A stretch of DNA of 25,065 nucleotides from Vitrella brassicaformis CCMP3155 (GCA_001179505.1 CDMY01000745.1:1-25065); one strand, 5' to 3'; positions 1 to 13,394 are shown, numbered from the stretch's first letter. Notes: generated by a model not told the origin, from the letters alone. Translations and numbers: made by a program.

Positions 1-859
1 GTTGAGCTGTTCATGCCACAGCGGGGGGCCATCAACAACCTCAAGCTAAGACCACTGGCCCAGGCGGCCCGCATTCCACCTCGTGTCGGCTGCATCGAGG
101 TTCGTGTTCGTGCGATCGGTCTGAATTTCCGTGACGTGTTGAACGTGATGGGATTGTATCCGGGCGACCCCGGTCCGCCGGGCGGCGACTGCTCGGGGAC
201 GGTGGTTGGCGTGGGCGAGGGCGTGAGTCATCTGTGTGTGGGAGATGACGTCTACGGCGTGCTACGTGACGACGGAGGCCAACCTGATGGCCATCAAGCC
301 CGCATCGATGACCTTCGAAGAGGCGGCCGCCCTGCCGGTCGTCTTTGTCACGGTCGAGGTGGCCTTCCGAGAGCTTGCCAAGGTCACCAAGGGAGACAAC
401 GTCCTCGTCCACGCGGCCAGCGGCGGCGTGGGGCTCGCGGCCATCCAGTACTGCAGGGCCGTCGGGGCCAATGTCTATGGCACGGCGGGCAGCCAGCACA
501 AACAGGACTCCCTACGACAGCAGGGCCTGCAGCTCGTCACGAGCTCGCGCGACGCCAACCAGTTCCAGGCCGACGTGAAGCAGACCAACAGCAAGGTCGA
601 CGTGGTGCTCAACTGCCTGATCGAGGACTTCATTCCCTTGTCGCTCGACGCGATGGCGCCCAAGGGCCGCTTCATGGAGCTGGGCAAGCGCGGCATCTGG
701 AACAAAGAGGAGGTGCTGGCCAGGCGGCCCGACTTGGCCATGTACGAGGCGATGGCCATCGACCAGATGATGGAGCAAGATCCCAAGTGGTTCGGCGGCA
801 TGCTCGACCGCCTCCGGGGCCTGGTCGATATTGGCAAGGTCAAGCCCATCCCTCTGCAC
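1..859 (+). CDS. Type I PKS/FAS enoylreductase (ER) domain, copy 1 (partial; frameshifted by a 20-nt deletion near 262)
   Basis: GLNFRDVL..GLYPG, LVHAASGGVGLAAIQ (NADPH-binding) and GRFMELGK motifs split over ORFs 13..1236 and 236..1258. Copy 2 has GCGCCCGGCTGCCTGCGGAC at this point, absent here. Confidence 0.92.
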
Positions 860-1159
860 NNNNNNNNNNNNNNNNNNNNNNNNNNNNNNNNNNNNNNNNN
901 NNNNNNNNNNNNNNNNNNNNNNNNNNNNNNNNNNNNNNNNNNNNNNNNNNNNNNNNNNNNNNNNNNNNNNNNNNNNNNNNNNNNNNNNNNNNNNNNNNNN
1001 NNNNNNNNNNNNNNNNNNNNNNNNNNNNNNNNNNNNNNNNNNNNNNNNNNNNNNNNNNNNNNNNNNNNNNNNNNNNNNNNNNNNNNNNNNNNNNNNNNNN
1101 NNNNNNNNNNNNNNNNNNNNNNNNNNNNNNNNNNNNNNNNNNNNNNNNNNNNNNNNNNN
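860..1159. other. Assembly gap (300 N)
   Basis: Run of N; same length as the other two gaps. Confidence 0.99.
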
Positions 1160-2430
1160 CCGATTGTATCCTGGCGACCCCGGTCCGCCGGGCGGCGACT
1201 GCTCGGGGACGGTGGTTGGCGTTGGGGAGGGCGTGAGTCACCTGAGTGTGGGCGATGACGTCTACGGCGTGGCGCCCGGCTGCCTGCGGACCTACGTGAC
1301 GACGGAGGCCAACCTGATGGCCATCAAGCCCGCATCGATGACCTTGGAAGAGGCGGCCCCCCTGCCGGTCGTCTTTGTGACGGTCGAGGTCGCCTTTGGA
1401 GAGCTTTGCCAAGGTCACCAAGGGAGACAACGTCCTCGTGCACGCGGCCAGCGGCGGCGTGGGGCTCGCGGCCATCCAGTACTGCAGGGCCGTCGGGGCC
1501 AATGTCTATGGCACGGCGGGCAGCCAGCACAAACAGGACTCCCTACGACAGCAGGGCCTGCAGCTCGTCACGAGCTCGCGCGACGCCAACCAGTTCCAGG
1601 CCGACGTGAAGCAGACCAACAGCAAGGTCGACGTGGTGCTCAACTGCCTGATCGAGGACTTCATTCCCTTGTCGCTCGACGCGATGGCGCCCAAGGGCCG
1701 CTTCATGGAGCTGGGCAAGCGCGGCATCTGGAACAAAGAGGAGGTGCTGGCCAGGCGGCCCGACTTGGCCATGTACGAGGCGATGGCCATCGACCAGATG
1801 ATGGAGCAAGATCCCAAGTGGTTCGGCGGCATGCTCGACCGCCTCCGGGGCCTGGTCGATGTTGGCAAGGTCAAGCCCATCCCTCTGCACACATTCGACA
1901 TGAGCAGCGCCGACCAAGTCACCGGCGGCATCGCGGCCTTCAGGTTCATGCAGAGGGCCCAGCACATCGGCAAGGTCGTCATGCAAATACCGTCCGCCAT
2001 CACGCCGCCCCACACAGGCGACACACAGCGCGACGAGGCGACACCGGCCGACCGCCAAGCTGACGGATGCTATGTCATCACCGGGGGGCTCGGCGGACTC
2101 GGAATGCTCGTCGCAGACTGGCTGGTGGATGAAGGCGCGAAACACATCGCTCTTGTGTCGAGGCGCGGCAGGCCGACCGATGCGGTGGCTGCCTCTGAGC
2201 TGTGGAAGAAGCTGACGGCACCCGAGCCTCAGGGCCGCTCCAAGGCGGCCATCCACTGCATGGCCGTGGACGTGTCCAGGAAGGACGAGTGCGAGAAGGC
2301 CTTTGCCGATCTGAATGAGCGACTGCCGAACAACCCAGTGAGGGGCATCTTCCACGCCGCTGGTGTGCCTGACGACGCTGCCCTCAGCAACCAGACCAAA
2401 GACAAGGTTGAGAAGGTCTACTTGCCGAAG
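1160..2430 (+). CDS. Type I PKS/FAS exon: ER copy 2 (+1 frameshift near 1406) and N-terminal part of ketoreductase (KR)
   Basis: ER motifs as in copy 1, ending QRAQHIGKVV; KR motifs YVITGGLGGLG and HAAGVPDD; exon ends YLPK at donor GTGAGT (2431). Confidence 0.93.
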
Positions 2431-2825
2431 GTGAGTGAGACCCCCAAGCTTGCTTCGACTCTCACTCATTCACTCATTCACTGAGTCAGTCAGTCAGCCA
2501 GTCAGCCAGTCAGCCAGTCAGTCACTTGGGTTGTGAGGCAGCCAGCCAGCCAGGCCGTGGCTGCTGCCCTCGCCCTTCCTCTCACTCACTCGCATCGCCA
2601 GTCACTCACACACTTTATCACTCTTTGCTTGCGCCATTCAGTCAGTCAGTCAGTCAGGCACTCACAATTCCGTCGCTCTCTCACTCAGTCCCAGCGAGCC
2701 AGCCAGCCAGTCAGTCGAGCACTCAGTTAGGAGACCCCCAACCGGAAGAATGAATGTATCGTTCCCCTAACGAGCATTGTTTGTTACTCATCCATCCATC
2801 GCTTCTGCCTCGTGTGTGTGTGCAG
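2431..2825 (+). other. Spliceosomal intron in KR with (CAGT/CAGC)n microsatellite
   Basis: GTGAGT...TGTGTGCAG; removal joins YLPK to VMGAWYLHEL, restoring the KR PKV.GAW.LH motif. Confidence 0.92.
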
Positions 2826-3587
2826 GTGATGGGCGCGTGGTACCTCCACGAGCTGTCGCTCGACGAGGACACCCCTCTCGACCACTTCATGATGTTCTCT
2901 TCCGTCGCCTCACTACTCGGCAACTTTGGTCAGGCCAACTACTCGTCGGCCAACTCCTGCCTGGACGCCCTCACCGAGTACCGCCGATCCAAGAAGCTCG
3001 CGGCGCAGAGCATTCAGTGGGGCCCGTGGATCCAGCAGGGCATGGCGGTCGAACTCAAGCAGCACCTCGACAAGGCGGGAATGCGCGGCATAACCAACGA
3101 TCTTGGTCTTCGCGTCCTCGGCGACGTCATGCGGCACTCTGAGAGCGTCGGGGTGACGTGCTGTCAGGTCTTCAAGTGGGACATCTTCCTGTCGAGGTAC
3201 GATGTCATCCCGCCCTTCTTCGAGACAGTGCGGTCAGCTGCCACGCGGGGCGCGGCGGCAGGCGTGTCGGTTAAGCTGCGCAGCATGGATGCAGCGGCCC
3301 TCAAGGAGTACATCCACACGACAGTCGTGGATGAAGCTGCAACGGTTCTCGGCATGACGGAAGCGCCGCCTCTGGATTCCCCTCTGCAGGAACTGGGCAT
3401 CGACTCACTCGGCGCCGTCGAATTCCGCAACGCCCTGTCCTCCAAGATCGGCGTCAAGCTGCCCGCCACCACGCTCTTCGACTACCCGACGCTCAACGCC
3501 ATCATTGACTTCATCTACAGTGAGGTCTCCGGGGGGGCGGAGGAGGCGGCCGCTGTGGACGAGTGGGGTGGGCCGTTGCCTGAGGCC
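2826..3587 (+). CDS. PKS KR C-terminal part and ACP, module copy A
   Basis: FSSVASLLGNFGQANYSSAN (catalytic Tyr), SIQWGPW, ACP LGIDSLGAVEFRN with phosphopantetheine Ser, LFDYPT. Confidence 0.94.
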
Positions 3588-3887
3588 NNNNNNNNNNNNN
3601 NNNNNNNNNNNNNNNNNNNNNNNNNNNNNNNNNNNNNNNNNNNNNNNNNNNNNNNNNNNNNNNNNNNNNNNNNNNNNNNNNNNNNNNNNNNNNNNNNNNN
3701 NNNNNNNNNNNNNNNNNNNNNNNNNNNNNNNNNNNNNNNNNNNNNNNNNNNNNNNNNNNNNNNNNNNNNNNNNNNNNNNNNNNNNNNNNNNNNNNNNNNN
3801 NNNNNNNNNNNNNNNNNNNNNNNNNNNNNNNNNNNNNNNNNNNNNNNNNNNNNNNNNNNNNNNNNNNNNNNNNNNNNNNNNNNNNNN
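3588..3887. other. Assembly gap (300 N)
   Basis: Run of N. Confidence 0.99.
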
Positions 3888-3986
3888 CCAGTCATCCACC
3901 CAGTCAGCAGACTGGAAGAATGAATGCATCGTCCCTCACGAACATTGTTCTCATCCATCACTTCCGTCTCGTGTGTGTGTATGCAG

Positions 3987-5717
3987 GTGATGGGTGCCTG
4001 GTACCTCCACGAGCTGTCCCTCGACAAGGAGACCCCTCTCGACCACTTCATGATGTTCTCTTCCGTCGCCTCACTACTCGGCAACTTTGGTAAGGCCAAC
4101 TACTCGTCGGCCAACTCCTGCCTGGACGCCCTCACCGAGTACCGCCGATCCAAGAAGCTCGCGGCGCAGAGCATTCAGTGGGGCCCGTGGACCCAGCAGG
4201 GCATGGCGGTCGAAGTCAAGCAGCACCTCGACAAGGCGGGAATGCGCGGCATAACCAACGATCTTGGTCTTCGCGTCCTCGGCGACGTCATGCGGCACTC
4301 TGAGAGCGTCGGGGTGACGTGCTGTCAGGTCTTCAAGTGGGACATCTTCCTGTCGAGGTACGATGTCATCCCGCCCTTCTTCGAGACAGTGCGGTCAGCT
4401 GCCACGCGGGGCGCGGCGGCAGGCGTGTCGGTTAAGCTGCGCAGCATGGATGCAGCGGCCCTCAAGGAGCACATCCACACGGCAGTCGTGGATGAAGCTG
4501 CAACGGTTCTCGGCATGACGGAAGCGCCGCCTCTGGATTCCCCTCTGCAGGAACTGGGCATCGACTCACTCGGCGCCGTCGAATTCCGCAACGCCCTGTC
4601 CTCCAAGATCGGCGTCAAGCTGCCCGCCACCACGCTCTTCGACTACCCGACGCTCAACGCCATCATTGACTTCATCTACAGTGAGGTCTCCGGGGGGGCG
4701 GACGAGGCGGCCGCTGTGGACGAGTGGGGTGTCCCGGTACCTGTGGCCATGTCTGAGAGCCTGGCTGTGGTGAGCGTGTCGTGCCGCCTGCCCGGCGGGG
4801 TGACAACCCCCTCATCCTTCTGGTCGATGCTCATGGACAAGACCGACTGTGTCGACGAGGTGCCGCTGACCCGCTGGAACGTTGACGAGGTCTACGACGC
4901 CGACCCCGATGCCAAGGGCAAGTGCTACACGCGAAAGGCGGCCTTCATGGAGGCGGCCGACATGTTCGACAACGCCTTCTTCAACATCGGCCCCGCTGAG
5001 GTCAACTGCATGGACCCCCAGCAGCGGCTGATGCTTGAAGTGGGCTACGAGGCCTTCCACAGCGCGGGCCTCAGCCGCGAGAAGCTCATTGGCCAGGACA
5101 TGGCCGTGCTCATCGGGTGCTGCAGCCAGGACTGGAACTTCATTGACTCGACGGACAAGAGCAGCAGCTACGCTGGCACGGGAGGTGCCGTCAGCATCGT
5201 CTCCAACCGCATCTCGTACGTGTTCGGTCTCAAGGGCCCCTCCATGACCATCGACACGGCATGCTCATCTTCATTGGTGGCCATGGACGTGGCGGTCAAG
5301 GACATGCGCATGGGGGTGTGCCGCGGTGCCCTGGTGGGAGGCGTCAACCTGATGCTCTCGCCCCACCCGTTCATTGCGCTCTGCAAGGCGCGCATGCTCT
5401 CGCCGGATTGCAAGTGCCAGACGTTTGACGCCAAGGCCAACGGCTACGTGAGGGGCGAGGGTGCGTGTGCCGTGGTGCTGCGGCGCGCGAGTGATGTGGA
5501 GGCGATGAAGCTGCGGCGGCTCGCTACTGTGCTTGGCTCGTCGGTCAACCACGATGGCCGAAGTGCCAGTCTGACGGCACCCAGCGGTCCCGCGCAGCAG
5601 GAGGCCATCAAGGAAGCGCTCAAGCAGGCCGGCGTGAAGCCATCGGCCGTCTCGTACATTGAGACCCACGGCACGGGCACATCCCTCGGCGACCCAATAG
5701 AGTTTGGAGCCCTTCAG
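3987..5717 (+). CDS. PKS KR C-terminal part and ACP (copy B) followed by ketosynthase (KS)
   Basis: Acceptor ATGCAG ends 3986; KR/ACP nearly identical to copy A; KS motifs CRLPGG, MDPQQRLMLE, DTACSSS (Cys), NGYVRGEG, HGTGT (His); donor GTAAGG at 5718. Confidence 0.96.
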
Positions 5718-5868
5718 GTAAGGTACCGTACCACGTGACCGTGTACTTGCAATGCAATTCAATGCAATGCATGTACTGTATGCATGACTGACTGTACTGA
5801 CTGTATGTTTCCATGATTTGTCCTTCGATGCGATGCGATGCGATGCGATGCTATGCTATGCGATGCAG
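5718..5868 (+). other. Intron in KS with (CGATG)n microsatellite
   Basis: GTAAGG...ATGCAG; phase-0 join EFGALQ|GVLG. Confidence 0.9.
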
Positions 5869-6433
5869 GGTGTGTTGGGTCCGGGTCGCAGTGACGGCAA
5901 CCCTCTTGTGCTGGGCGCTCTCAAGACCAACATCGGGCATCTGGAGGGAGCCGCGGGCATAGCGGGTCTCGCGAAGCTCATCATGACGCTCCTGCACGGC
6001 TGCGCGGCGCCCAACCTGTACTTGACTCAGCTGAACCCCTACCTTGACATCGAGGGCTTCCCGGTGGTCTTCCCCACCGAGCCCGTGCCGCTCGTCTCTG
6101 GCCTGCCCGCCAAGGAACGCATGGTCGGCGGCGTCAGCTCCTTCGGGTTCGGCGGCGCCAATGCTCACGTCCTCGTGGAGGCCAAGGCGCTCAGTGCCGC
6201 GCAGATCGATGAGATGCTCAAAAAGGACAGTGGGTCGGCGGCGCTGCAGAACAAGATCGGGTTCATGTTCACCGGGCAGGGCTCCCAGTACGTCGACATG
6301 GGGCGCAAGCTCTATGACAACGAGAAGGTGTTCCGGGAGTGCATCGACGAGTGCGCGACCATCTTGGATCCGCTGCTGCCCGTGCCACTTACAGGCATCC
6401 TCTACCCCAAGACCGACCAGGCCAAGACCAAAA
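5869..6433 (+). CDS. PKS KS C-terminus, linker and start of cis-acyltransferase (AT)
   Basis: KTNIGHLEGAAG (second His), SSFGFGGANAH, then FMFTGQGSQYVDMG; truncated by gap. Confidence 0.95.
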
Positions 6434-6733
6434 NNNNNNNNNNNNNNNNNNNNNNNNNNNNNNNNNNNNNNNNNNNNNNNNNNNNNNNNNNNNNNNNNNN
6501 NNNNNNNNNNNNNNNNNNNNNNNNNNNNNNNNNNNNNNNNNNNNNNNNNNNNNNNNNNNNNNNNNNNNNNNNNNNNNNNNNNNNNNNNNNNNNNNNNNNN
6601 NNNNNNNNNNNNNNNNNNNNNNNNNNNNNNNNNNNNNNNNNNNNNNNNNNNNNNNNNNNNNNNNNNNNNNNNNNNNNNNNNNNNNNNNNNNNNNNNNNNN
6701 NNNNNNNNNNNNNNNNNNNNNNNNNNNNNNNNN
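6434..6733. other. Assembly gap (300 N)
   Basis: Run of N separating the PKS AT from an unrelated gene. Confidence 0.99.
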
Positions 6734-6782
6734 GGGGTTGAGTGGGCAAGAGCGAGAGGTTGATGTGTTGTGATTGCTTCAG

Positions 6783-7177
6783 GCGAGAATCCCGCCTTGT
6801 TGCAGAGCTGCTACACGACATCCCTGAACATACTCAAGGTCACACACACACGCGCGCACACACGTGTGGGGCACAGTTTGGTGTTCTTCGGTGCCATTCC
6901 ATCGTTACATGAATGGTGTCTGGCTATGCTCAGGAGAATGATCTTCGGAGCATAGCTTTTTCCTGCATCAGCACTGGGATCTTCGAATACCCCAATGCTC
7001 GGGCAGCCAAGGTCAGCCCGATGCATAAGAGATGTGAATATGTGTGTGCCTTGCCGTGCTTTAAAGGTTGCCCTCGGTACGGTGCGTGACTGGCTGAGTG
7101 ATCCCGATAACTTTGCGAGCGTCGATCGCGTGGTGTTCTGCACCTCCTTTGCCAAAGACAAGGACATATAGGAGAGG
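6783..7177 (+). pseudogene. MacroD-type macrodomain (ADP-ribose binding/hydrolase), C-terminal half, 3 exons, in-frame TAG at 7169-7171
   Basis: Exons 6783-6838, 6934-7011, 7067-7177 splice to GENPALLQSCYTTSLNILK-ENDLRSIAFSCISTGIFEYPNARAAK-VALGTVRDWL...VDRVVFCTSFAKDKDI*ER, matching the MacroD pattern CY..SL...L.S.AF.CISTG.(F/Y)GYP..AA...L.T.R.WL...VDR..C...KD..IY. N-terminus lies in the gap. Confidence 0.85.
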
Positions 7178-7317
7178 GTGGTTGCCCAATCAAACAACAC
7201 ACACACACACACGGACCCATATACACACACACACCCCTCCACAGACCCACATACTCGGCTGTCTGCCTAAAGGTGCAAACACGTATCTCCTCTGTCTGTG
7301 TCTGGGTGCCGTGTCAG

Positions 7318-8482
7318 ATTATGGATGCTGTGTTACGTGGTGAGGAGGAGGGCGAAGGCGGTGCAGCTGAGGAATACGAACCGGCAGACGACATCGAAGA
7401 GGACACATCTCCGGTGACCTCTCAGAAAGCCCCCTCGTCAACAATAACCGCAGCGATAGGAAGCCTGTTGATGTCCATTGGGTCCGAGACGAAGCAGGCG
7501 ACGTCTCAGAAAGCCCCCTTGCCAACAACGACCGCAGCGAAAGGAAGCCCATCAATGTCCATTGGGTCCCAGATGAAGCTTGCGCGGTGCTTCAATAAAG
7601 CGTATTCCTCGGTGTGCGGGAAATTATCATATGCGGCTTGGCCCTTGATTCCCAACCGCTTCAGCTTGGGAGACTTTGGCATCTTCAAAAATGGCATCTT
7701 CCACAGCAAGGGCAATATCTTGGACTTGCAACCACCGCCTTGGGACCCGAACGATAAATGCCGCGGTCCAGCATCCTGTGTGGATGTATCCTGTGGCAAG
7801 ATCAAGACTGTCAAGATGGAAGGCAAGGTAGAAGTCGAGACCCTTCCAGCGACGGGGGACGTCAGTGTTGCCTTCGAGTTTCTCTCGGAGAACACCGCGG
7901 TCTTAAGGGCATTCGTGGAGAGGGAACAGATTAGCAACACTGATAAGGTCTTATCGCGACTTGTCCTGCATCCATCTTGGAAGAGGGGTTACAAGGTGGT
8001 GACAGCCGTTGACATTGGCAAGCAGTGTGTAGCTCTTGCTGCCGAGAAGAAGTTCGCCAAGGTGGAATTCAGGGGTGAAGCTAGTATACTCAAGCAACTC
8101 GAGACCCCGTGGAGCGCCAAGGTGATACAGATATGTACACACCCACGCACATGGAAAGAGAGGGCACGAAATGCAGAGAGGTCAGACAGACAGAGTGCGC
8201 GAATGAGAGAGCATACAGATGAGAATGGCATTCATGGAGTGGCATACGTTTGTTTGCCCTCCGCTCAGGACCAACAGGGCGACCAGCAGCAGCAAATACA
8301 ACCATTCACAGTGGAGAGTCGGGGAGGGGCCATGGTTCATCTCGTTGGGGCAGAAGGCGTGATAGGGCTTGAGCTGTTGGGATGGGAAGATGTTACTGTG
8401 GAGGATCCAAGAGGAATCTTCCGGGGAATCTTCCGTCACAAGAGGCCTCTGCCTGGTCAAGTCTTCATCACCACACTCACTG
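7318..8482 (+). CDS. Acidic linker plus gasdermin-like pore-forming domain (domain about 7573-8400; in-frame 147-nt intron 8122-8268)
   Basis: Acceptor GTGTCAG ends 7317. Motif order YAAWP...LGDFG.FKNG.F...GNI; FEF.SEN...L.A; I.N.DKVL..L; W...YKVVTAV; AAEK..AKVEF.GEA; GVIGLEL parallels the strand order I recognise in bacterial gasdermins. Recognition by eye, no search run. Confidence 0.62.
7416..7583 (+). repeat. 84-bp in-frame tandem duplication in the linker
   Basis: CTCAGAAAGCC at 7421 and 7505; protein TSQKAP..T.TAA.GS..MSIGS..K twice. Confidence 0.9.
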
Positions 8483-8786
8483 GTGAGTCAGTGAGAGAGT
8501 GAGATATGGTACAGACAGACCAAGTCATTTGACGCCCATGATTGTGCTCGTTTTCTGCTGATAATTGGTCTGTACTTATAGGCGACGTGGTGATGACATT
8601 GGATGTGTCAGCCCCTCCTACACGACCGAAAGAGTGAAGGCCGACGTGCACAACCAGCTGAGTATCCCTCCTGAGGTCCAGTGCTTAGTCTTTGCCCACC
8701 GTGAGCTCGAAGACGGCCACACTTTAGCAGACTACAACGTCCGGAGCAACGACACGATCAAGCTCAGCATCCGTCTGCGAGGCGGA
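8458..8786 (+). CDS. Ubiquitin-like domain with intact C-terminal RLRGG; intron 8483-8581; 2-nt frameshift at 8605-8608
   Basis: QVFITTLTG|DVVMTLDV(S)PSYTTERVKADV...IPPEVQCLVFAHRELEDGHTLADYNV...IRLRGG aligns with ubiquitin end to end; removing one GT from GATGTGTC restores the frame. Confidence 0.9.
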
Positions 8787-8867
8787 GGCTCGCTGCCATT
8801 ATCTGACTTCTCGGAGGAAGACGGGGAACCATTGAGAGCTCCGATTCCCCCGCGGCAGGACACAGGA

Positions 8868-8934
8868 CAGAGGCCGAAAGGACGCCCATTGATATCCAGT
8901 GGGTCCCAGATGAAGCTAGCGCGGTGCCTGAATA
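8868..8934 (+). repeat. Truncated second copy of linker end and gasdermin-like N-terminus
   Basis: KGRPLISSGSQMKLARC matches KGSPSMSIGSQMKLARC at 7537-7590; nucleotide similarity stops at AATA 8934. Confidence 0.88.
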
Positions 8935-9043
8935 TGCTAGAGACAGCCACAAGACACAAAATGGGGAGAGAAACTGATGCTCCCCACGGCACTCCATCCA
9001 TTCATGAATGTGTGTCTTTTCCTCTCTCTGTTGGCCGTTGTAG

Positions 9044-12000
9044 GTATCCCCTTGTGTGCAACCCTCCCTACGTGCCAGTCAAAGACAACCCCACTGGCTG
9101 CTACCTCAGGGACTTCTCTCTGCCGTCAGAATGGACCGGTCGCCGCATCCTCGCCACGTTCGGTGGCGCGTCGTCGGCCTACTACGTGTGGGTCAACGGT
9201 CAGCCGGTGGGCTACGCGCAGGACTCGTTCATGCCCAGCGAGTTTGACGTCACGGCCCTGGTGCGGCTTGGCGATGACAACACCAACACGATCGCCGTGC
9301 AGGTGATGCGGTTCTCCGACGGCAGCTACATCGAGGACCAGGACCACTGGTGGACATCGGGCGTATTCAGAGACGTGGAGACATTCGCAGCGCCCAGCAC
9401 AACCATCAGTGACTACGTCGTGCAGGCCACACTCGACAACAAATACCAGTAAGACAGCAAGGAACAGCAAGGAGGGTGTGAGCCAACGGCAGACACATGC
9501 ATGTGCTCTTGCCTTAATTGCAGGGATGGCATACTGAAGGCTCGTGTGCAGTTGGACGGCCTCCAGGATGACAAGAGCTACTCTGTCCAGTTCCGCCTCT
9601 ATGACTGGGAGGGCTTCACCATGGACCCATCGACCGAACAAGACATCAGACTGCCGGTAAGTCGGCACACACGCCGCTCGTGCCTCCCTCACACCCAAAT
9701 CGACTGTCGCATGTGTCGATCAGGACCTGTCGCCCATCTTCGAGCACACAGAGGCCGTCACCGGTGGCCAACAGACATCAACCGATGCAGCCCCATTCAA
9801 GCAGCGAGAAGAGATCCCTCTGCTTGCTGAGACATCCGCAGGCCAAGACCATCACGCATTTCTCGAGTGGACGGTGCGCGTGCCGTCTGTCCGCCCCTGG
9901 ACTGCCGAGACTCCCAACCTGTATTTCATGACCATCGGTCTGCTGGAGGGGGGCAAAAGTGAGGCGCTGCAGTGGGAGGGGATGAGGGTCGGCTTCCGCA
10001 CTGTGGAGATACGTGAGAGCCAGCTGATGGTCAACGGCAGGCCGATTGTTGTCAGAGGTGTCAATGGTCACGAACATGACCCGAAAGCAGGTGCACAAAG
10101 CAAACAAGGGAAGAGAGAGTGTGCTCACTTGTTGTATCCTTGTTGTGTTGTATTGTGTCGTGATGTGTGTCGTGGCGCAGGCAAGGCGGTGTCGCTTCAG
10201 TCGACATGGGCGGATTTGCGTCTGATGAAGCAGCACAACATCAACGCCGTGCGGACGTCTCGCTACCCCAACGCACCATTCCTATACGACATGTGCGACG
10301 AACTCGGCCTATTCGGTAAGACGACAAACAAACCAACACAACACGCACATGTAAACGCCCCTCATTGCCGCATTCATGCATGTGTGTATGGATGTGTACG
10401 TTCAGTTGTGGACGAGGCTAACATCGAGTGCCACGGCAAAGGCTACTCACCCATCCTAAAGTAACTAACACCTACCGCACACACTTCACAAGTGACGATC
10501 GCCGTTCTCACTGCCCGCTCCTGGATATATCAGGTACATATTCTTCAACTCGAGTGAGATCCCTTTCAGTCGCCTCGCATCGGACCCCGAGTACCGCAGC
10601 CAGTGGCTCGCGTGCGTCACACGCATGGCCCAGCGGGACAAGAACCACCCCTCCATCATCGTTTGGTCCCTCGGCAATGAGGCGGGCACGGGGCCCAACG
10701 TGCGGGCAGCATATCGGTGGCTGAAGCGTTACGATCCGGCCAGGCCTGTGCAGTACGAGTGTGGTGGGTCTCCCATTGACGTGTCGGACATCAAATGCCC
10801 CATGTACCCGCCGGTAGAGGTCATCAAGCAATACGGCCACCAGCAGACAGGTACACGAGGAGAGACGGCGAGAGATGGCGGGCATGCAGCCATGGACCGT
10901 GCGTGATATTCGTGTGTCTGTTGTGTTTCTGCCTGCCTGCTGCAGACAAGCGTCCGATGATATTGTGTGAGTACCAGCACGCCATGGGCAACTCCAACGG
11001 CAGCTTCAGGGAGTACTGGGAGGCGTTCAGCCATCACGCCAACCTGCAGGGCGGGTTCATATCGGGCTGGGTCGACCAGTGCGTCCCCAAGACGTTCGAC
11101 AAGATCGAGGCGTGGGCGTATGGCGGCGACTTCGGCGACACCATCAACGATGCCAACTTCAACATCAACGGCCTCGTGCTGCCGGACCGCACCATCAAGC
11201 CGTGCATGCACGAGGTCAAGTATTTCTACCAGCCGATCGCCGTCCACCTCCTCGGCGCCAAGGCAGCACCAGGCGGCGACACGGTCACGGTGACGATCCG
11301 CATCACTAATCAATTCATCCATCAGAGTGTCACACATGACATGATCCGCTTTGAGGCCGTCTTCAGCACCGACACGGCATTCGATGCCTACGAGAGCCAG
11401 GCTATCAAGTGCCCGACGCTCGAGCCTGGCGCAGGCGAGGAGGTCACGGTCGAGGGCAGGATGCCGCCCAAGAACGCTGCCATGGGCACAGAAGGGGGGA
11501 AGGAGGGCTGCATTCCTGACGTGTGGATCACTGTGAGGGCAATCCTCGGCAAGACGACTAAATGGGCTGATGAAGGGTAAGCCAGCACGAGCACGCCTGG
11601 CCACAGCACTCATCACGGTGTTCCTGTGTGTCTTGTCCGTGCAGGCATGTGGTGGCGACAGAGCGCCTCTCTCTGACCGACAGCTTCCGCGACGCTCTCC
11701 CGACCGCCCCCGGCCCCCAAACCTTTCTGCGCTTCCCGCCTGCCGGTGGTGATGCCGCTAAGGACCTGACGATAGAGGACTGCGGCGACTACGTGGCGGT
11801 GCAGGGAGAGGACTTCAAGCTCGCCTTCGACCGCGGCCGACTGGGGGGGCTCATATCGTGGGTGGCCATACCTTGGTCAAGACAGGAGTGGGCAGACCTC
11901 GCGACAAAGCCTGACCAGTAATGAGGGCGAAAGGAGGGAAACCACGCTTCTGCTACGCACCCATGTGTGTGTTGGTGGTCAGGGAGTTCGCGATTGAGTA

Positions 12001-13394
12001 CATTTGGGACGGTCATGGCCCGTCGGTGTGCTTTGTCCGCGCGCCAACTGACAACGATCGCGGGGGAGCGACTGCTGGCGGTGTCCTCGACATCGCAAGG
12101 CAGGTCTTTGAAAAGGGGCTCGGCAACATTTTGTCGTTCTCTAGCAAAATACTCAGAATCGCCATGAACAGGTGAGACAGCAAACATGCAGCACGCTGGT
12201 CAGGCATGGAAATAGCTCTTCTGTACTTGTGTGTGCAGGTCTCCAATAAGTGAGGTCATCAACTACGCGTCTCGTTGGGGGAGGGCCAAGCTCTACGACC
12301 TACACAAGCCCATCGGGCACTTCGATGAACACGTGCGCACATTGGAGAATCCGTCAGGCGGCAGCATCAAGGTCGCCGAGGTGTCTTTCGCCCAGACTAT
12401 CGCACCCGGCCAAGCAATCGATCCTTACTTCCAGGCACACGCACCGACCCGTGCACACTCTGACCCATGCACATAAGAAGACCCTCTCCAGCGGTCTCTT
12501 CTCGTTTTTCTTTGTGCAGGTGGACTACCATTACACGATTTTCCCCACTGGTGCAGTAAATCTCGGCTGCCGCGTATGCGTGACTCCCCAAGCGGCCCGC
12601 ATCCTTCCCCCTTTCCCGCGTGTCGTCAGCCAGCTGGTGTGGAAGGGACGAGGGCCGCACGAGAAATACAACGATAGGAAATCGAGCGCATTTCAGGTGA
12701 GAAAGGCAGCTACACACAGAGAGATACATGTATATGCATGGATGCATATGAAGCTCTGATGTCCGTCCATGTACGTGCGTGCATGCAGGGCGTGTATCGC
12801 AGCACAGTGGATGACCAGTACGTGCCCTACGTCAAGCCGTCCGAGCACGGCGGCAAGTGTGACGTTCAGTGGGCGGCCCTCCACACCACGTCCAAGACAC
12901 ATGGCCCCGCAAACCGCACCACTGGCAGCTGCCTGCACATCAAGGCGGCCCACTTCAAGGCCTCCCCTCAGCAAGACTGCCCACCACACACACCGCCTCT
13001 GCTGCACATTAATGCGTCCCGCTACAGCGTCAAGGAGCTGATGGGTGCAGCCCACACGAGCGATATCGGCCAGGGCATCGATGTGGACCCCAATGCACAC
13101 GTCCGCTCGCCCGTCCACCTGCATCTTGACCACAAATATGTATACATACATCCACACGGACGGACCAGGGAGGGCGAGGGACTGCATAACATGGGTGTTG
13201 AGTGTTGCTGTGTGTAGGCACATGGGTGTCGTGGTGAGTTGAGCTGGTATCCGTGTATGTACGAGCCCTACCTCATCCGACCCACCACGCAGGACAGGTC
13301 GCCCGCGTCGTTCGAGTACGGCATGTGGCTGCTGCCGGTGCACGTGGACAGCCAAGAGGATGTGCTCTCGATAGCTGCATGTGCGCCGCAGTGA
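9044..13394 (+). pseudogene. lacZ-like: LacZ-type GH2 beta-galactosidase, 5'-truncated, 12 introns, several lesions
   Basis: Spliced motifs NPTGCY, EDQDHW..SGVFRDV, DEANIECHG, NHPSIIVWSLGNE, CPMY, ILCEYQHAMGNS, YGGDFGD, RAPTDND, GRGPHE, PYVKPSEHG. Introns 9449-9523, 9657-9723, 10091-10180, 10316-10405, 10461-10533, 10851-10945, 11577-11644, ~11858-11982, 12172-12238, ~12372/12381-12519, 12697-12788, 13136-13217 (donor reads ATATGT). 1-nt deletion at ~13231; stop TGA 13392-13394. Confidence 0.92.

What the first reader, a model, noticed from the sequence alone, without database searches (positions are those of the whole stretch)
8458..8934. Ubiquitin with intact RLRGG sits between two gasdermin-like starts: relic of a repeating polyprotein
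After RLRGG comes an acidic spacer (DFSEEDGEP) and then the same GSQMKLARC sequence that opens the first gasdermin-like domain. The ancestor may have been Macro-GSDM-Ub-GSDM(-Ub)n, cut into units by deubiquitinases as polyubiquitin precursors are. That would yield a GSDM with a conjugatable diglycine end and a second GSDM with a new N-terminus.
Basis: partly seen in the sequence, partly recalled or inferred. Interest (0 to 1): 0.72.

Follow-up and report, generated by a model that had tools for sequence, protein, structure and literature searches.

The report
Broken gasdermin-ubiquitin gene spliced to beta-galactosidase
The repeated "start" after the ubiquitin is real, but RNA shows it is a short duplicated piece used as a splice site onto a truncated beta-galactosidase copy, in a decayed member of an algal gene family where ubiquitin sits between a bacterial-type gasdermin pore domain and its tail.

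Summary
Observation partly confirmed. A ubiquitin-like domain lies at 8458-8789, split by a 99-nt intron. RLRGG, the acidic spacer and a second GSQMKLARC (60 nt, 87% identical to 7538-7597) are all present. However, a 1-nt deletion near 8605, seen in DNA and in RNA from two studies, puts RLRGG out of frame, and the spliced frame stops at 8635-8637. The second "start" covers only 9 codons. Its Arg-Cys codons supply a GT donor at 8924 that one RNA contig joins to 9044, an exon of a 5'-truncated GH2 beta-galactosidase duplicate. Upstream, a TAG replaces a Tyr codon in the Macro domain. No paralogue has gasdermin-Ub-gasdermin. The family layout is gasdermin, then Ub ending in GG, then a short acidic tail like the C-terminal tail of bacterial homologues, then (on contig C761) Macro. 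This copy has lost the tail. The end of C761 probably abuts the window's assembly gap. That would give two successive gasdermin-Ub units plus a third start, so a tandem-duplication relic is plausible; a working polyprotein is not. The scan had already noted the Ub-inserted gasdermin on other DNA of this genome (s1-215898); I reached the same reading independently. The splice to beta-galactosidase, the lost tail and the C761 link are added here.

The parts
6434..6733 (.). Assembly gap (run of N) between a polyketide-synthase stretch and the Macro exons. The 3' end of contig C761 probably belongs here.
   Evidence: sequence; fit of the C761 end
6783..6838 (+). Macro-domain exon (ENPALLQSCYTTSLNILK). 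Boundaries inferred from the paralogue C456, not from RNA.
6934..7011 (+). Macro-domain exon (Pfam Macro positions 88-117)
   Evidence: E 4.8e-7; the joint giving intron 7012-7066 appears in 3 RNA runs
7067..7177 (+). Macro-domain exon carrying an in-frame TAG at 7169-7171, where paralogue C456 has Tyr (DIYER)
7318..8121 (+). One exon, joined in frame to the Macro exon by RNA. It holds the acidic Macro C-end, two 84-nt linker repeats (7413-7580), and then the first part of the gasdermin-like domain from the Met at 7573.
   Evidence: a bacterial-only HMM matches 7573-8121 at E 3e-40
8269..8482 (+). Exon with the last part of the gasdermin-like domain (to about 8457) and ubiquitin strand 1 (8458-8482, QVFITTLTG; the final G codon is split by the intron)
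8483..8581 (+). GT-AG intron inside the ubiquitin domain, at the same position as in C839 and C761
   Evidence: runs X11, X7
8582..8789 (+). Rest of the ubiquitin-like domain. A 1-nt deletion at about 8605/8606 shifts the frame: the spliced frame stops at TGA 8635-8637, and RLRGGG (8772-8789) is in the -1 frame.
8790..8860 (+). Post-ubiquitin spacer (SLPLSDFSEEDGEPLRAPIPPRQ) shared with C761. Similarity to C761 ends at about 8860, where C761 continues into the tail and Macro.
8875..8934 (+). Third copy of the 60-nt linker plus gasdermin start (ATG 8910-8912, GSQMKLARC). The GT at 8924-8925 is used as a splice donor.
8924..9043 (+). Intron seen in RNA run X7 (one contig; an unspliced contig is also present). 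By DNA similarity its last ~36 nt (from 9008) match the intron of the beta-galactosidase paralogue on C333.
9044..9448 (+). First retained exon of a 5'-truncated GH2 beta-galactosidase copy (GH2_N profile positions 49-169). The upstream exon carried by the C333 paralogue is absent from this contig.

Best explanation
The stretch is the ubiquitin-like domain and post-ubiquitin spacer of a decayed, still transcribed member of a small algal gene family. In that family a bacterial-type gasdermin pore domain is separated from its short acidic C-terminal tail by an inserted eukaryotic ubiquitin that keeps GG. In this copy three things have gone wrong. A Tyr codon of the upstream Macro domain is now TAG. 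One base is missing in ubiquitin strand 2, so the spliced frame stops at 8635-8637 and RLRGG is out of frame. The tail (and whatever followed it) has been replaced by a 60-nt copy of the linker plus the first 9 gasdermin codons. The Arg-Cys codons of that copy provide a GT donor that is spliced to an exon of a 5'-truncated beta-galactosidase duplicate. The 'second gasdermin start' is therefore an exon end in a chimeric transcript, not the start of a second domain. Shown: the anatomy, the splice joints, the lesions and the paralogue layouts. Inferred: that nothing useful is translated past the breaks (transcribed pseudogene); that contig C761 abuts the gap, making the locus a relic of tandem gasdermin-Ub-tail-Macro units (about 75% for the abutment; about even odds that the third start is a unit relic rather than a local 60-75-nt duplication); and that in intact family members cutting after GG would detach the inhibitory tail.
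For: RNA contigs give these GT-AG joints: 7177->7318 (Macro to gasdermin exon, in frame, 3 runs), 8121->8269, 8482->8582 and 8923->9044. A single 1363-nt contig covers 7317-8925 in spliced form with no differences. The frame break is shown, and the TAG versus Tyr in C456. Gasdermin identity rests on four results. A profile of the three paralogues finds 502 proteins, mostly about 240 aa. A bacterial-only HMM hits the window exon at E 3e-40. The AF2 model of paralogue C740 has pLDDT 88, and the top 20 VIA rows are all gasdermins, best Z 9.7 and 9.5 to the Vitiosangium bacterial gasdermin. A Flavobacteriaceae homologue sits immediately upstream of a CHAT protease, with a caspase-family gene next. 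For the tail: bacterial homologues end in an acidic tail that typically closes with DD plus a hydrophobic residue, often with an upstream Trp. MAFFT places 49 of 54 such tails on C839 residues 460-475, after its ubiquitin. A tail HMM scores C761 10.7 bits (0 of 2000 shuffles reach it), C740 6.6 (1 of 2000), C839 2.1 (94 of 2000) and the window -1.5. In the AF2 model of C839 the post-Ub strands have pLDDT 71-94, and VIA alignments to gasdermins run from residue 1 to 466-477. For the beta-galactosidase truncation. For the C761 fit: it holds the genome's only orphan close Macro N-half, at a contig end, and the window holds the only orphan C-half, at a gap edge. The two ends carry 21 + 49 nt of an intron that is 67 nt long in paralogue C456.
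Against: The gasdermin exons themselves (about 255 codons of domain) carry no stop. GG is retained, and the beta-galactosidase catalytic exons are open. The RNA is readily assembled despite premature stops. So some product could still be made: a tail-less gasdermin from ATG 7321, or a short beta-galactosidase from ATG 8910. The 8923->9044 joint rests on one contig in one run, with 27 nt on its shorter side. The C761-window adjacency is circumstantial. No sequence-family model (Pfam, PADLOC, NCBIfam) recognises the domain as gasdermin, and the PDB profile hit to 7N50 is only E 0.05. The window's own spliced protein was not folded.
Confidence: 0.65

Rival explanations
1. One reading: the locus is a relic of a Macro-GSDM-Ub-GSDM(-Ub)n polyprotein that deubiquitinases cut into units, giving a gasdermin with a conjugatable GG end and a second gasdermin with a fresh N-terminus.
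For: GG is kept in all three Ub-bearing copies, and in C839 and C761 the frame stays open past GG. The Macro and gasdermin exons are spliced in frame. C761 plus the window would give two consecutive units and a third start.
Against: No copy anywhere in the genome goes from Ub into a gasdermin domain. In the paralogues Ub is followed by the gasdermin's own tail, and by Macro on C761, so the repeat unit, if any, is GSDM-Ub-tail-Macro. A cut after GG would not free the next gasdermin's N-terminus. In this copy the frame is broken twice.
Confidence: 0.1
2. The second GSQMKLAR is a one-off local duplication of a minisatellite-like linker unit, with no tandem gene array behind it, that happened to create a usable splice donor.
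For: The unit already exists as two tandem 84-nt copies at 7413-7580. The third copy is only 60-75 nt long. It is unique in the genome. Its left flank is the post-Ub spacer, not Macro sequence.
Against: If C761 abuts the gap, then Macro-linker-gasdermin start is the normal junction between successive units. A third such start right after unit 2 is then what one deletion of tail-Macro would leave.
Confidence: 0.3
3. The locus is functional as several separate products of one RNA: a truncated Macro protein; a tail-less (hence uninhibited) gasdermin started at ATG 7321, nine bases after the TAG, by reinitiation; and a short beta-galactosidase started at ATG 8910.
For: The gasdermin exons are free of stops. 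The ATG at 7321 lies 9 nt after the TAG in the spliced RNA. The duplicated piece brings the family's native start codon in frame with the beta-galactosidase exon. The catalytic exons are open.
Against: Internal initiation on a long eukaryotic mRNA is unusual. A gasdermin lacking its tail would be expected to be toxic (PMC13475620 on tail inhibition). The beta-galactosidase lacks positions 1-48 of its first domain and the whole N-terminal exon of its paralogue.
Confidence: 0.1
4. Programmed recoding (TAG read-through plus a -1 shift in the ubiquitin) restores a full Macro-gasdermin-ubiquitin-beta-galactosidase polyprotein. Alternatively, the breaks are sequencing errors.
For: Both breaks leave the downstream frames open for long stretches.
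Against: By eye I saw no canonical slippery heptamer at 8600-8612 (inspection only). The paralogue shows a plain 1-nt deletion. The same letters are present in the assembly and in RNA contigs of two studies, with no variant reported.
Confidence: 0.03

Closest known systems
Bacterial gasdermins with adjacent caspase-like/CHAT proteases (bGSDM; structures 7N50-7N52, 8SL0, 9A84; described in PMC9134750 and PMC13475620)
   Same: Same fold: VIA Z 9.5-10.2 to the Vitiosangium bGSDM, and all top 16-20 rows are gasdermins. Homologues are about 240 aa with a short acidic C-terminal tail. A bacterial homologue lies next to CHAT and Peptidase_C14 genes. Per PMC13475620, the Runella tail G248-T268 wraps the beta-sheet core and is removed by cleavage at L247-G248.
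   Different: Pfam, PADLOC and NCBIfam models do not recognise the family. The algal genes have introns. A eukaryotic ubiquitin plus linker (about 190 residues in C839) is inserted in the segment between the last core strand and the tail. The window's copy has no tail and is frame-broken.
Natural ubiquitin-fusion precursors (polyubiquitin, Ub-ribosomal protein fusions) cut after GG by deubiquitinases (textbook knowledge)
   Same: The domain is a bona fide ubiquitin derivative: 50-53% identical to the alga's own polyubiquitin. It ends in GG and is followed in frame by further polypeptide.
   Different: Ubiquitin is internal, with a large protein on its N-terminal side. It is a single unit, not a head-to-tail Ub repeat. 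Cleavage is untested. In the window's copy the Ub frame is broken.
bGSDM fused to an extra C-terminal domain (GKIL_3049 bGSDM-LysM, PMC13475620)
   Same: A gasdermin of bacterial type carrying an additional globular domain via a flexible loop.
   Different: There the extra domain follows a complete autoinhibited bGSDM. Here the extra domain (Ub) is placed between the pore domain and the tail, and on C761 a Macro domain follows the tail.
Chimeric transcribed pseudogenes / exon capture after segmental duplication (general genome biology)
   Same: A 5'-truncated duplicate (beta-galactosidase) is transcribed from an upstream gene and joined through a donor recruited from coding sequence. The locus carries nonsense and frameshift lesions.
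   Different: Nothing unusual for this class, apart from the identity of the partners.

Membership tests
Ubiquitin family (PF00240) | Profile match to the beta-grasp domain | tested here: met
   E 9.2e-12 over profile positions 15-72 for 8583-8934; 50% identity to the genome's own polyubiquitin
Ubiquitin family (PF00240) | Whole domain readable in one frame of the mature RNA | tested here: not met
   The splice 8482->8582 continues in a frame that stops at 8635-8637. A 1-nt deletion relative to C761 causes this.
Ubiquitin family (PF00240) | C-terminal GG that is cleaved or conjugated | not testable with these tools
   GG is present in the -1 frame and in C839 and C761. Cleavage needs an experiment.
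Gasdermin (bacterial type) | Gasdermin N-domain fold | tested here: met
   Tested on paralogues, not on the window's own spliced protein. C740 model: pLDDT 88, VIA top 20 rows all gasdermins, Z 9.7. C839 model: Z 10.2. The window exon is 36% identical to C740 by the six-frame search and matches the bacterial-only HMM at E 3e-40.
Gasdermin (bacterial type) | Recognition by curated gasdermin sequence models | tested here: not met
   No Pfam, PADLOC or NCBIfam hit. The PDB profile's best hit is 7N50 at only E 0.05. The Atlas lists Bact_GSDM in 12% of one neighbouring cluster.
Gasdermin (bacterial type) | Short C-terminal inhibitory tail after the pore domain | tested here: not met
   The window copy has no tail motif in the frame-B product after Ub (tail HMM -1.5 bits), and its DNA similarity to C761 ends before the tail. 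Paralogues C761, C740 and C839 have it.
Gasdermin (bacterial type) | Partner protease encoded next to it | tested here: inconclusive
   Met for a bacterial homologue (CHAT and Peptidase_C14 neighbours). No protease gene was looked for or seen beside the algal copies.
Polyprotein of repeated units cut at Ub-GG | Two or more like units in one open frame | tested here: not met
   TAG at 7169 and the frameshift at 8605 break the frame. The second gasdermin is 9 codons long. No GSDM-Ub-GSDM exists in the genome.
Macro domain (PF01661) | Profile match and an intact frame | tested here: inconclusive
   Positions 88-117 match at E 4.8e-7. The N-half is missing (gap), and a TAG replaces the Tyr of the last helix.
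GH2 beta-galactosidase | Complete N-terminal sugar-binding domain | tested here: not met
   Only profile positions 49-169 are present. The exon with positions 2-49 exists on C333 but not on this contig.

The most novel reading that the evidence does not exclude
C761 plus the window is what remains of a head-to-tail array of gasdermin-ubiquitin-tail-Macro units that was once read as one precursor. In the intact family members, a deubiquitinase-type cut after the ubiquitin's GG is the activating step, because it severs the pore domain from its inhibitory tail. That would be a ubiquitin-gated gasdermin.
Probability: 0.12. Interest if true: 0.8.

Novelty: new variant of a known kind. Interest (0 to 1): 0.45.

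Why it matters
For this stretch alone the result is sobering. The apparent repeat of a gasdermin start behind an intact ubiquitin is a broken, chimeric copy, so it should not be used as evidence for a gasdermin polyprotein. It is still useful as a natural comparison for the intact relatives on C839 and C740. The copies show which parts travel together: pore domain, Ub with GG, tail, and sometimes Macro. They also show that ubiquitin sits in the segment between the last core strand and the tail, which in bacterial gasdermins is where proteases cut. I found no paper holding both 'gasdermin' and 'Vitrella', and none of eight papers on bacterial gasdermins, C-terminal regions and ubiquitin-like fusions listed a gasdermin-ubiquitin fusion in its title or abstract; only one was opened. 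If cutting at GG releases the tail, that would be a new way to arm a cell-death pore, in a close relative of apicomplexan parasites, and it is directly testable with recombinant protein.

Tried and rejected
- The word-based protein search with the window's gasdermin exon found nothing. Pfam, PADLOC and NCBIfam gave no family. Only the profile search of the representative library opened the family.
Only one bacterial context was seen. The contigs of P0003 and P0004 were too short to be informative.
- A search with the C761 Ub-tail-Macro piece, meant to find an RNA-derived protein bridging C761 and the window, found nothing.
- I checked whether an alternative acceptor could restore the ubiquitin frame. 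No AG lies in the right register between 8582 and 8612 (read).
- I asked whether the post-spacer part of the window (PKGRPLISS...) is a diverged tail. It shows about 44% DNA matches to the C761 tail region, which is chance level, and the tail HMM is negative. Rejected.
- I asked whether the beta-galactosidase has its own 5' exon in the window. None was found.
- I looked for canonical -1 slippery sites at the shift. None was seen.
- Exons were handled separately by reference, and the folds are of paralogues C740 and C839.

Full report
**What the window is**

The window is an entire 25-kb scaffold (C745) of a 72.7-Mb, 1064-contig eukaryotic assembly with GT-AG introns. Earlier notes of this scan name the organism as Vitrella brassicaformis. 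The size and contig count fit my memory of that assembly, but no tool confirmed the name here. Bases 1-6433 encode polyketide-synthase modules. A run of N follows (6434-6733). After it come Macro-domain exons, the gasdermin-like domain, the ubiquitin-like domain, and GH2 beta-galactosidase exons.

**Checking the observation**

- Pfam ubiquitin matches 8583-8934 at E 9.2e-12 over profile positions 15-72.
- That piece is 50% identical to the genome's own polyubiquitin.
- The first strand, QVFITTLTG, lies on the preceding exon at 8458-8482.
- IRLRGGG, the spacer SLPLSDFSEEDGEPLRAPIPPRQ and GSQMKLA(RC) are read in one frame.
- The repeated start is a true DNA repeat. 8875-8934 is 87% identical to 7538-7597, and the upstream copy is itself part of two tandem 84-nt units at 7413-7580.
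- Similarity ends at 8934, nine codons into the gasdermin.

**RNA evidence**

Three runs behave as RNA: they show GT-AG joints that are absent from a DNA run. The introns are:

- 7012-7066
- 7178-7317
- 8122-8268
- 8483-8581
- 8924-9043
- further introns inside the beta-galactosidase

From these joints:

- The Macro exon 7067-7177 is joined in frame to the exon 7318-8121.
- One 1363-nt contig covers 7317-8119, 8267-8481 and 8581-8925 in spliced form with no differences.
- The 8923->9044 joint is seen in one contig of one run, with 27 nt on its shorter side. An unspliced contig (8896-9072) is also present.
- The contigs are therefore consistent with one transcription unit: Macro, gasdermin, ubiquitin, spacer, GSQMKLAR, beta-galactosidase.
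- The joint falls in the Arg codon of GSQMKLAR and continues in frame with YPLVCNPPYVP of the beta-galactosidase exon.

**The lesions**

- The Macro exon reads ...FAKDKDI*ER. The paralogue on C456 reads ...LAKDQDIYER and then IMDGVLRGEDEE after the same intron. The TAG at 7169-7171 therefore replaces a Tyr codon.
- After the ubiquitin intron, the frame set by the splice reads GDVVMTLDVSAPPTRPKE and stops at 8635-8637.
- The rest of the ubiquitin, including RLRGG, is in the -1 frame.
- Alignment with C761 shows a single missing base at about 8605/8606.
- RNA contigs from two studies cover both spots with no gaps and no other letters, so these are not assembly errors.

**What the domain before the ubiquitin is**

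- Family libraries and the word search gave nothing.
- The genome has two further full copies, on C740 and C839, and a fragment on C761.
- A profile of these copies found 502 proteins at E <= 0.001, mostly about 240 aa with the match starting at residue 1.
- An HMM built only from 101 of those proteins of 230-270 aa hits the window exon 7573-8121 at E 3e-40, and the next exon at 2.4e-5.
- One such protein comes from a Flavobacteriaceae genome. It lies immediately upstream of a CHAT protease, followed by a Peptidase_C14 gene, among TIR, patatin and subtilisin genes. This is the arrangement described for bacterial gasdermin systems.
- The AF2 model of the C740 domain has pLDDT 88 and pTM 0.83.
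- Foldseek's first 12 rows are gasdermins, though only at E 1.7e-3 or weaker.
- In VIA-align the first 20 rows are all gasdermins. The best are the Vitiosangium bacterial gasdermin at Z 9.7 (rmsd 3.1 over 142 residues) and Z 9.5.
- "Gasdermin-like" is therefore supported by fold and by context. It is not supported by curated sequence models.

**Where ubiquitin sits in the family**

- Bacterial homologues end in a short acidic tail that typically closes with DD plus a hydrophobic residue, often with a Trp a few residues upstream.
- The three algal copies carry a conserved (V/L)xxx(T/M)DWGD(E/K)LxD motif. In C839 and C761 it lies after the ubiquitin. In C740 it lies after a long hydrophobic linker.
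- MAFFT placed 49 of 54 bacterial tails on C839 residues 460-475 without any guidance.
- A tail-only HMM gave these scores:

| Copy | Score (bits) | Shuffles reaching it (of 2000) |
|---|---|---|
| C761 | 10.7 | 0 |
| C740 | 6.6 | 1 |
| C839 | 2.1 | 94 |
| Window | -1.5 | not tested |

- In the AF2 model of C839 the post-ubiquitin segment forms two strands with pLDDT 71-94, while the linkers are disordered.
- Gasdermin structures align from model residue 1 through 466-477.
- According to PMC13475620, the Runella tail (G248-T268) wraps the beta-sheet core and is removed by cleavage at L247-G248.
- Ubiquitin, which is 50-53% identical to the alga's own ubiquitin, is thus inserted in the segment where bacterial gasdermins are cut.
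- The ubiquitin keeps GG in all three copies, and the same intron position.
- The scan had already noted this layout on another piece of the genome (s1-215898). I saw that note only after reaching the same reading.

**What this copy has instead of the tail**

- The window and C761 are alignable from the ubiquitin through ...RAPIP(P/L)RQ, to about 8860.
- C761 then continues with the tail, an acidic stretch and a Macro domain in one open frame.
- The window instead switches to the 60-nt linker/start copy.
- By DNA similarity the last ~36 nt of the 8924-9043 intron (from 9008) match the intron of the full-length beta-galactosidase paralogue on C333; the two flanks also translate alike for about 20 codons before the exon.
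- The C333 upstream exon (...IYTNVK, GH2_N positions 2-49, plus a hydrophobic N-terminal region) has no counterpart on this contig.
- The beta-galactosidase copy is therefore 5'-truncated, although its catalytic exons are open.

**Is it a relic of repeated units?**

- The Macro search found exactly one orphan close N-half and one orphan C-half. The N-half is at C761 positions 2-69, at the contig's very end. The C-half is at window positions 88-117, right after the gap.
- C761 stops 21 nt into an intron after ...HAVGPIG. The window resumes 49 nt before the exon ENPALLQSCY.
- In the paralogue C456 the same intron is 67 nt long.
- I therefore think it likely, at about 75%, that C761 abuts the window at the gap.
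- The locus would then read: gasdermin fragment, Ub, spacer, tail, Macro, linkers, gasdermin, Ub, spacer, linker/start, beta-galactosidase. That is two units, 72-92% identical in DNA, followed by a third start.
- This supports a tandem-duplication origin with a gasdermin-Ub-tail-Macro unit.
- A simple local duplication of the minisatellite-like linker remains a fair alternative for the third start.
- Nothing shows that such an array was ever a working polyprotein. A cut after GG would not free the next gasdermin's N-terminus.

**Verdict**

The motifs are real, but the reading as an intact ubiquitin between two gasdermin starts does not hold at the level of the mature RNA. The locus is best seen as a transcribed, decaying chimera. 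Its value is comparative, for the intact gasdermin-ubiquitin-tail genes of the same genome.

I did not build, search or fold the joined spliced protein of this locus. Exons were used separately by reference.

Noticed in passing
window 1-6433: Polyketide-synthase modules (ER/KR/ACP/KS/start of AT) with near-identical duplicated stretches and several N gaps. The join to the Macro exons across the 6434-6733 gap may be a scaffolding error, since C761 fits that gap edge.
   Followed up: partly
L004 (G000:C761:20170-23275), 2294-2824: One open frame runs from the ubiquitin-like exon (ending ARGGGG) through the shared spacer and the gasdermin-type tail (VVFFVRTDWGDELPDD) into a Macro domain. The gasdermin upstream is only a C-terminal fragment, preceded by unrelated sequence with long minus-strand ORFs that have no Pfam hit.
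   Followed up: partly
L012 (G000:C740), 1498-3072: Paralogue in which the gasdermin domain and the tail are separated not by ubiquitin but by a Pro-rich and strongly hydrophobic (transmembrane-like) stretch. This part also contains an assembly gap.
   Followed up: no
L018 (Flavobacteriaceae MAG, NVXD01000017.1), 1850-12747: The bacterial homologue sits in a defence-island-like cluster: patatin, TPR-S, YEATS-TIR and TIR genes upstream; CHAT protease, Peptidase_C14, a TIR protein and a subtilisin downstream.
   Followed up: partly
P0003 (285 aa, from run SRR23318454): By far the closest non-Vitrella relative (E 1.6e-45). It shares the ETPW motif with the window's copy. Its source organism is unknown and the contig is only 1.5 kb. 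It may be another alga.
   Followed up: no
P0041 (772 aa) and P0078 (728 aa): Homologues fused to other domains: a ParA/MinD-type ATPase in front of the gasdermin-like domain, and peptidoglycan-binding domains behind it.
   Followed up: no
L005 (G000:C333), 1642-2559 minus strand: The full-length beta-galactosidase paralogue starts with an exon encoding several hydrophobic, membrane-like segments ahead of the GH2 sugar-binding domain. This is unusual for this enzyme family.
   Followed up: no
window 6800-10500 (run X13): A 2025 marine-sediment metagenome run holds 36% of the sampled words of this stretch. This suggests that this alga, or a very close relative, occurs in that sediment.
   Followed up: no
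window 7190-7250: A CA-rich microsatellite inside the 7178-7317 intron attracts many foreign contigs (depth spike and loose ends). Depth there is meaningless.
   Followed up: no
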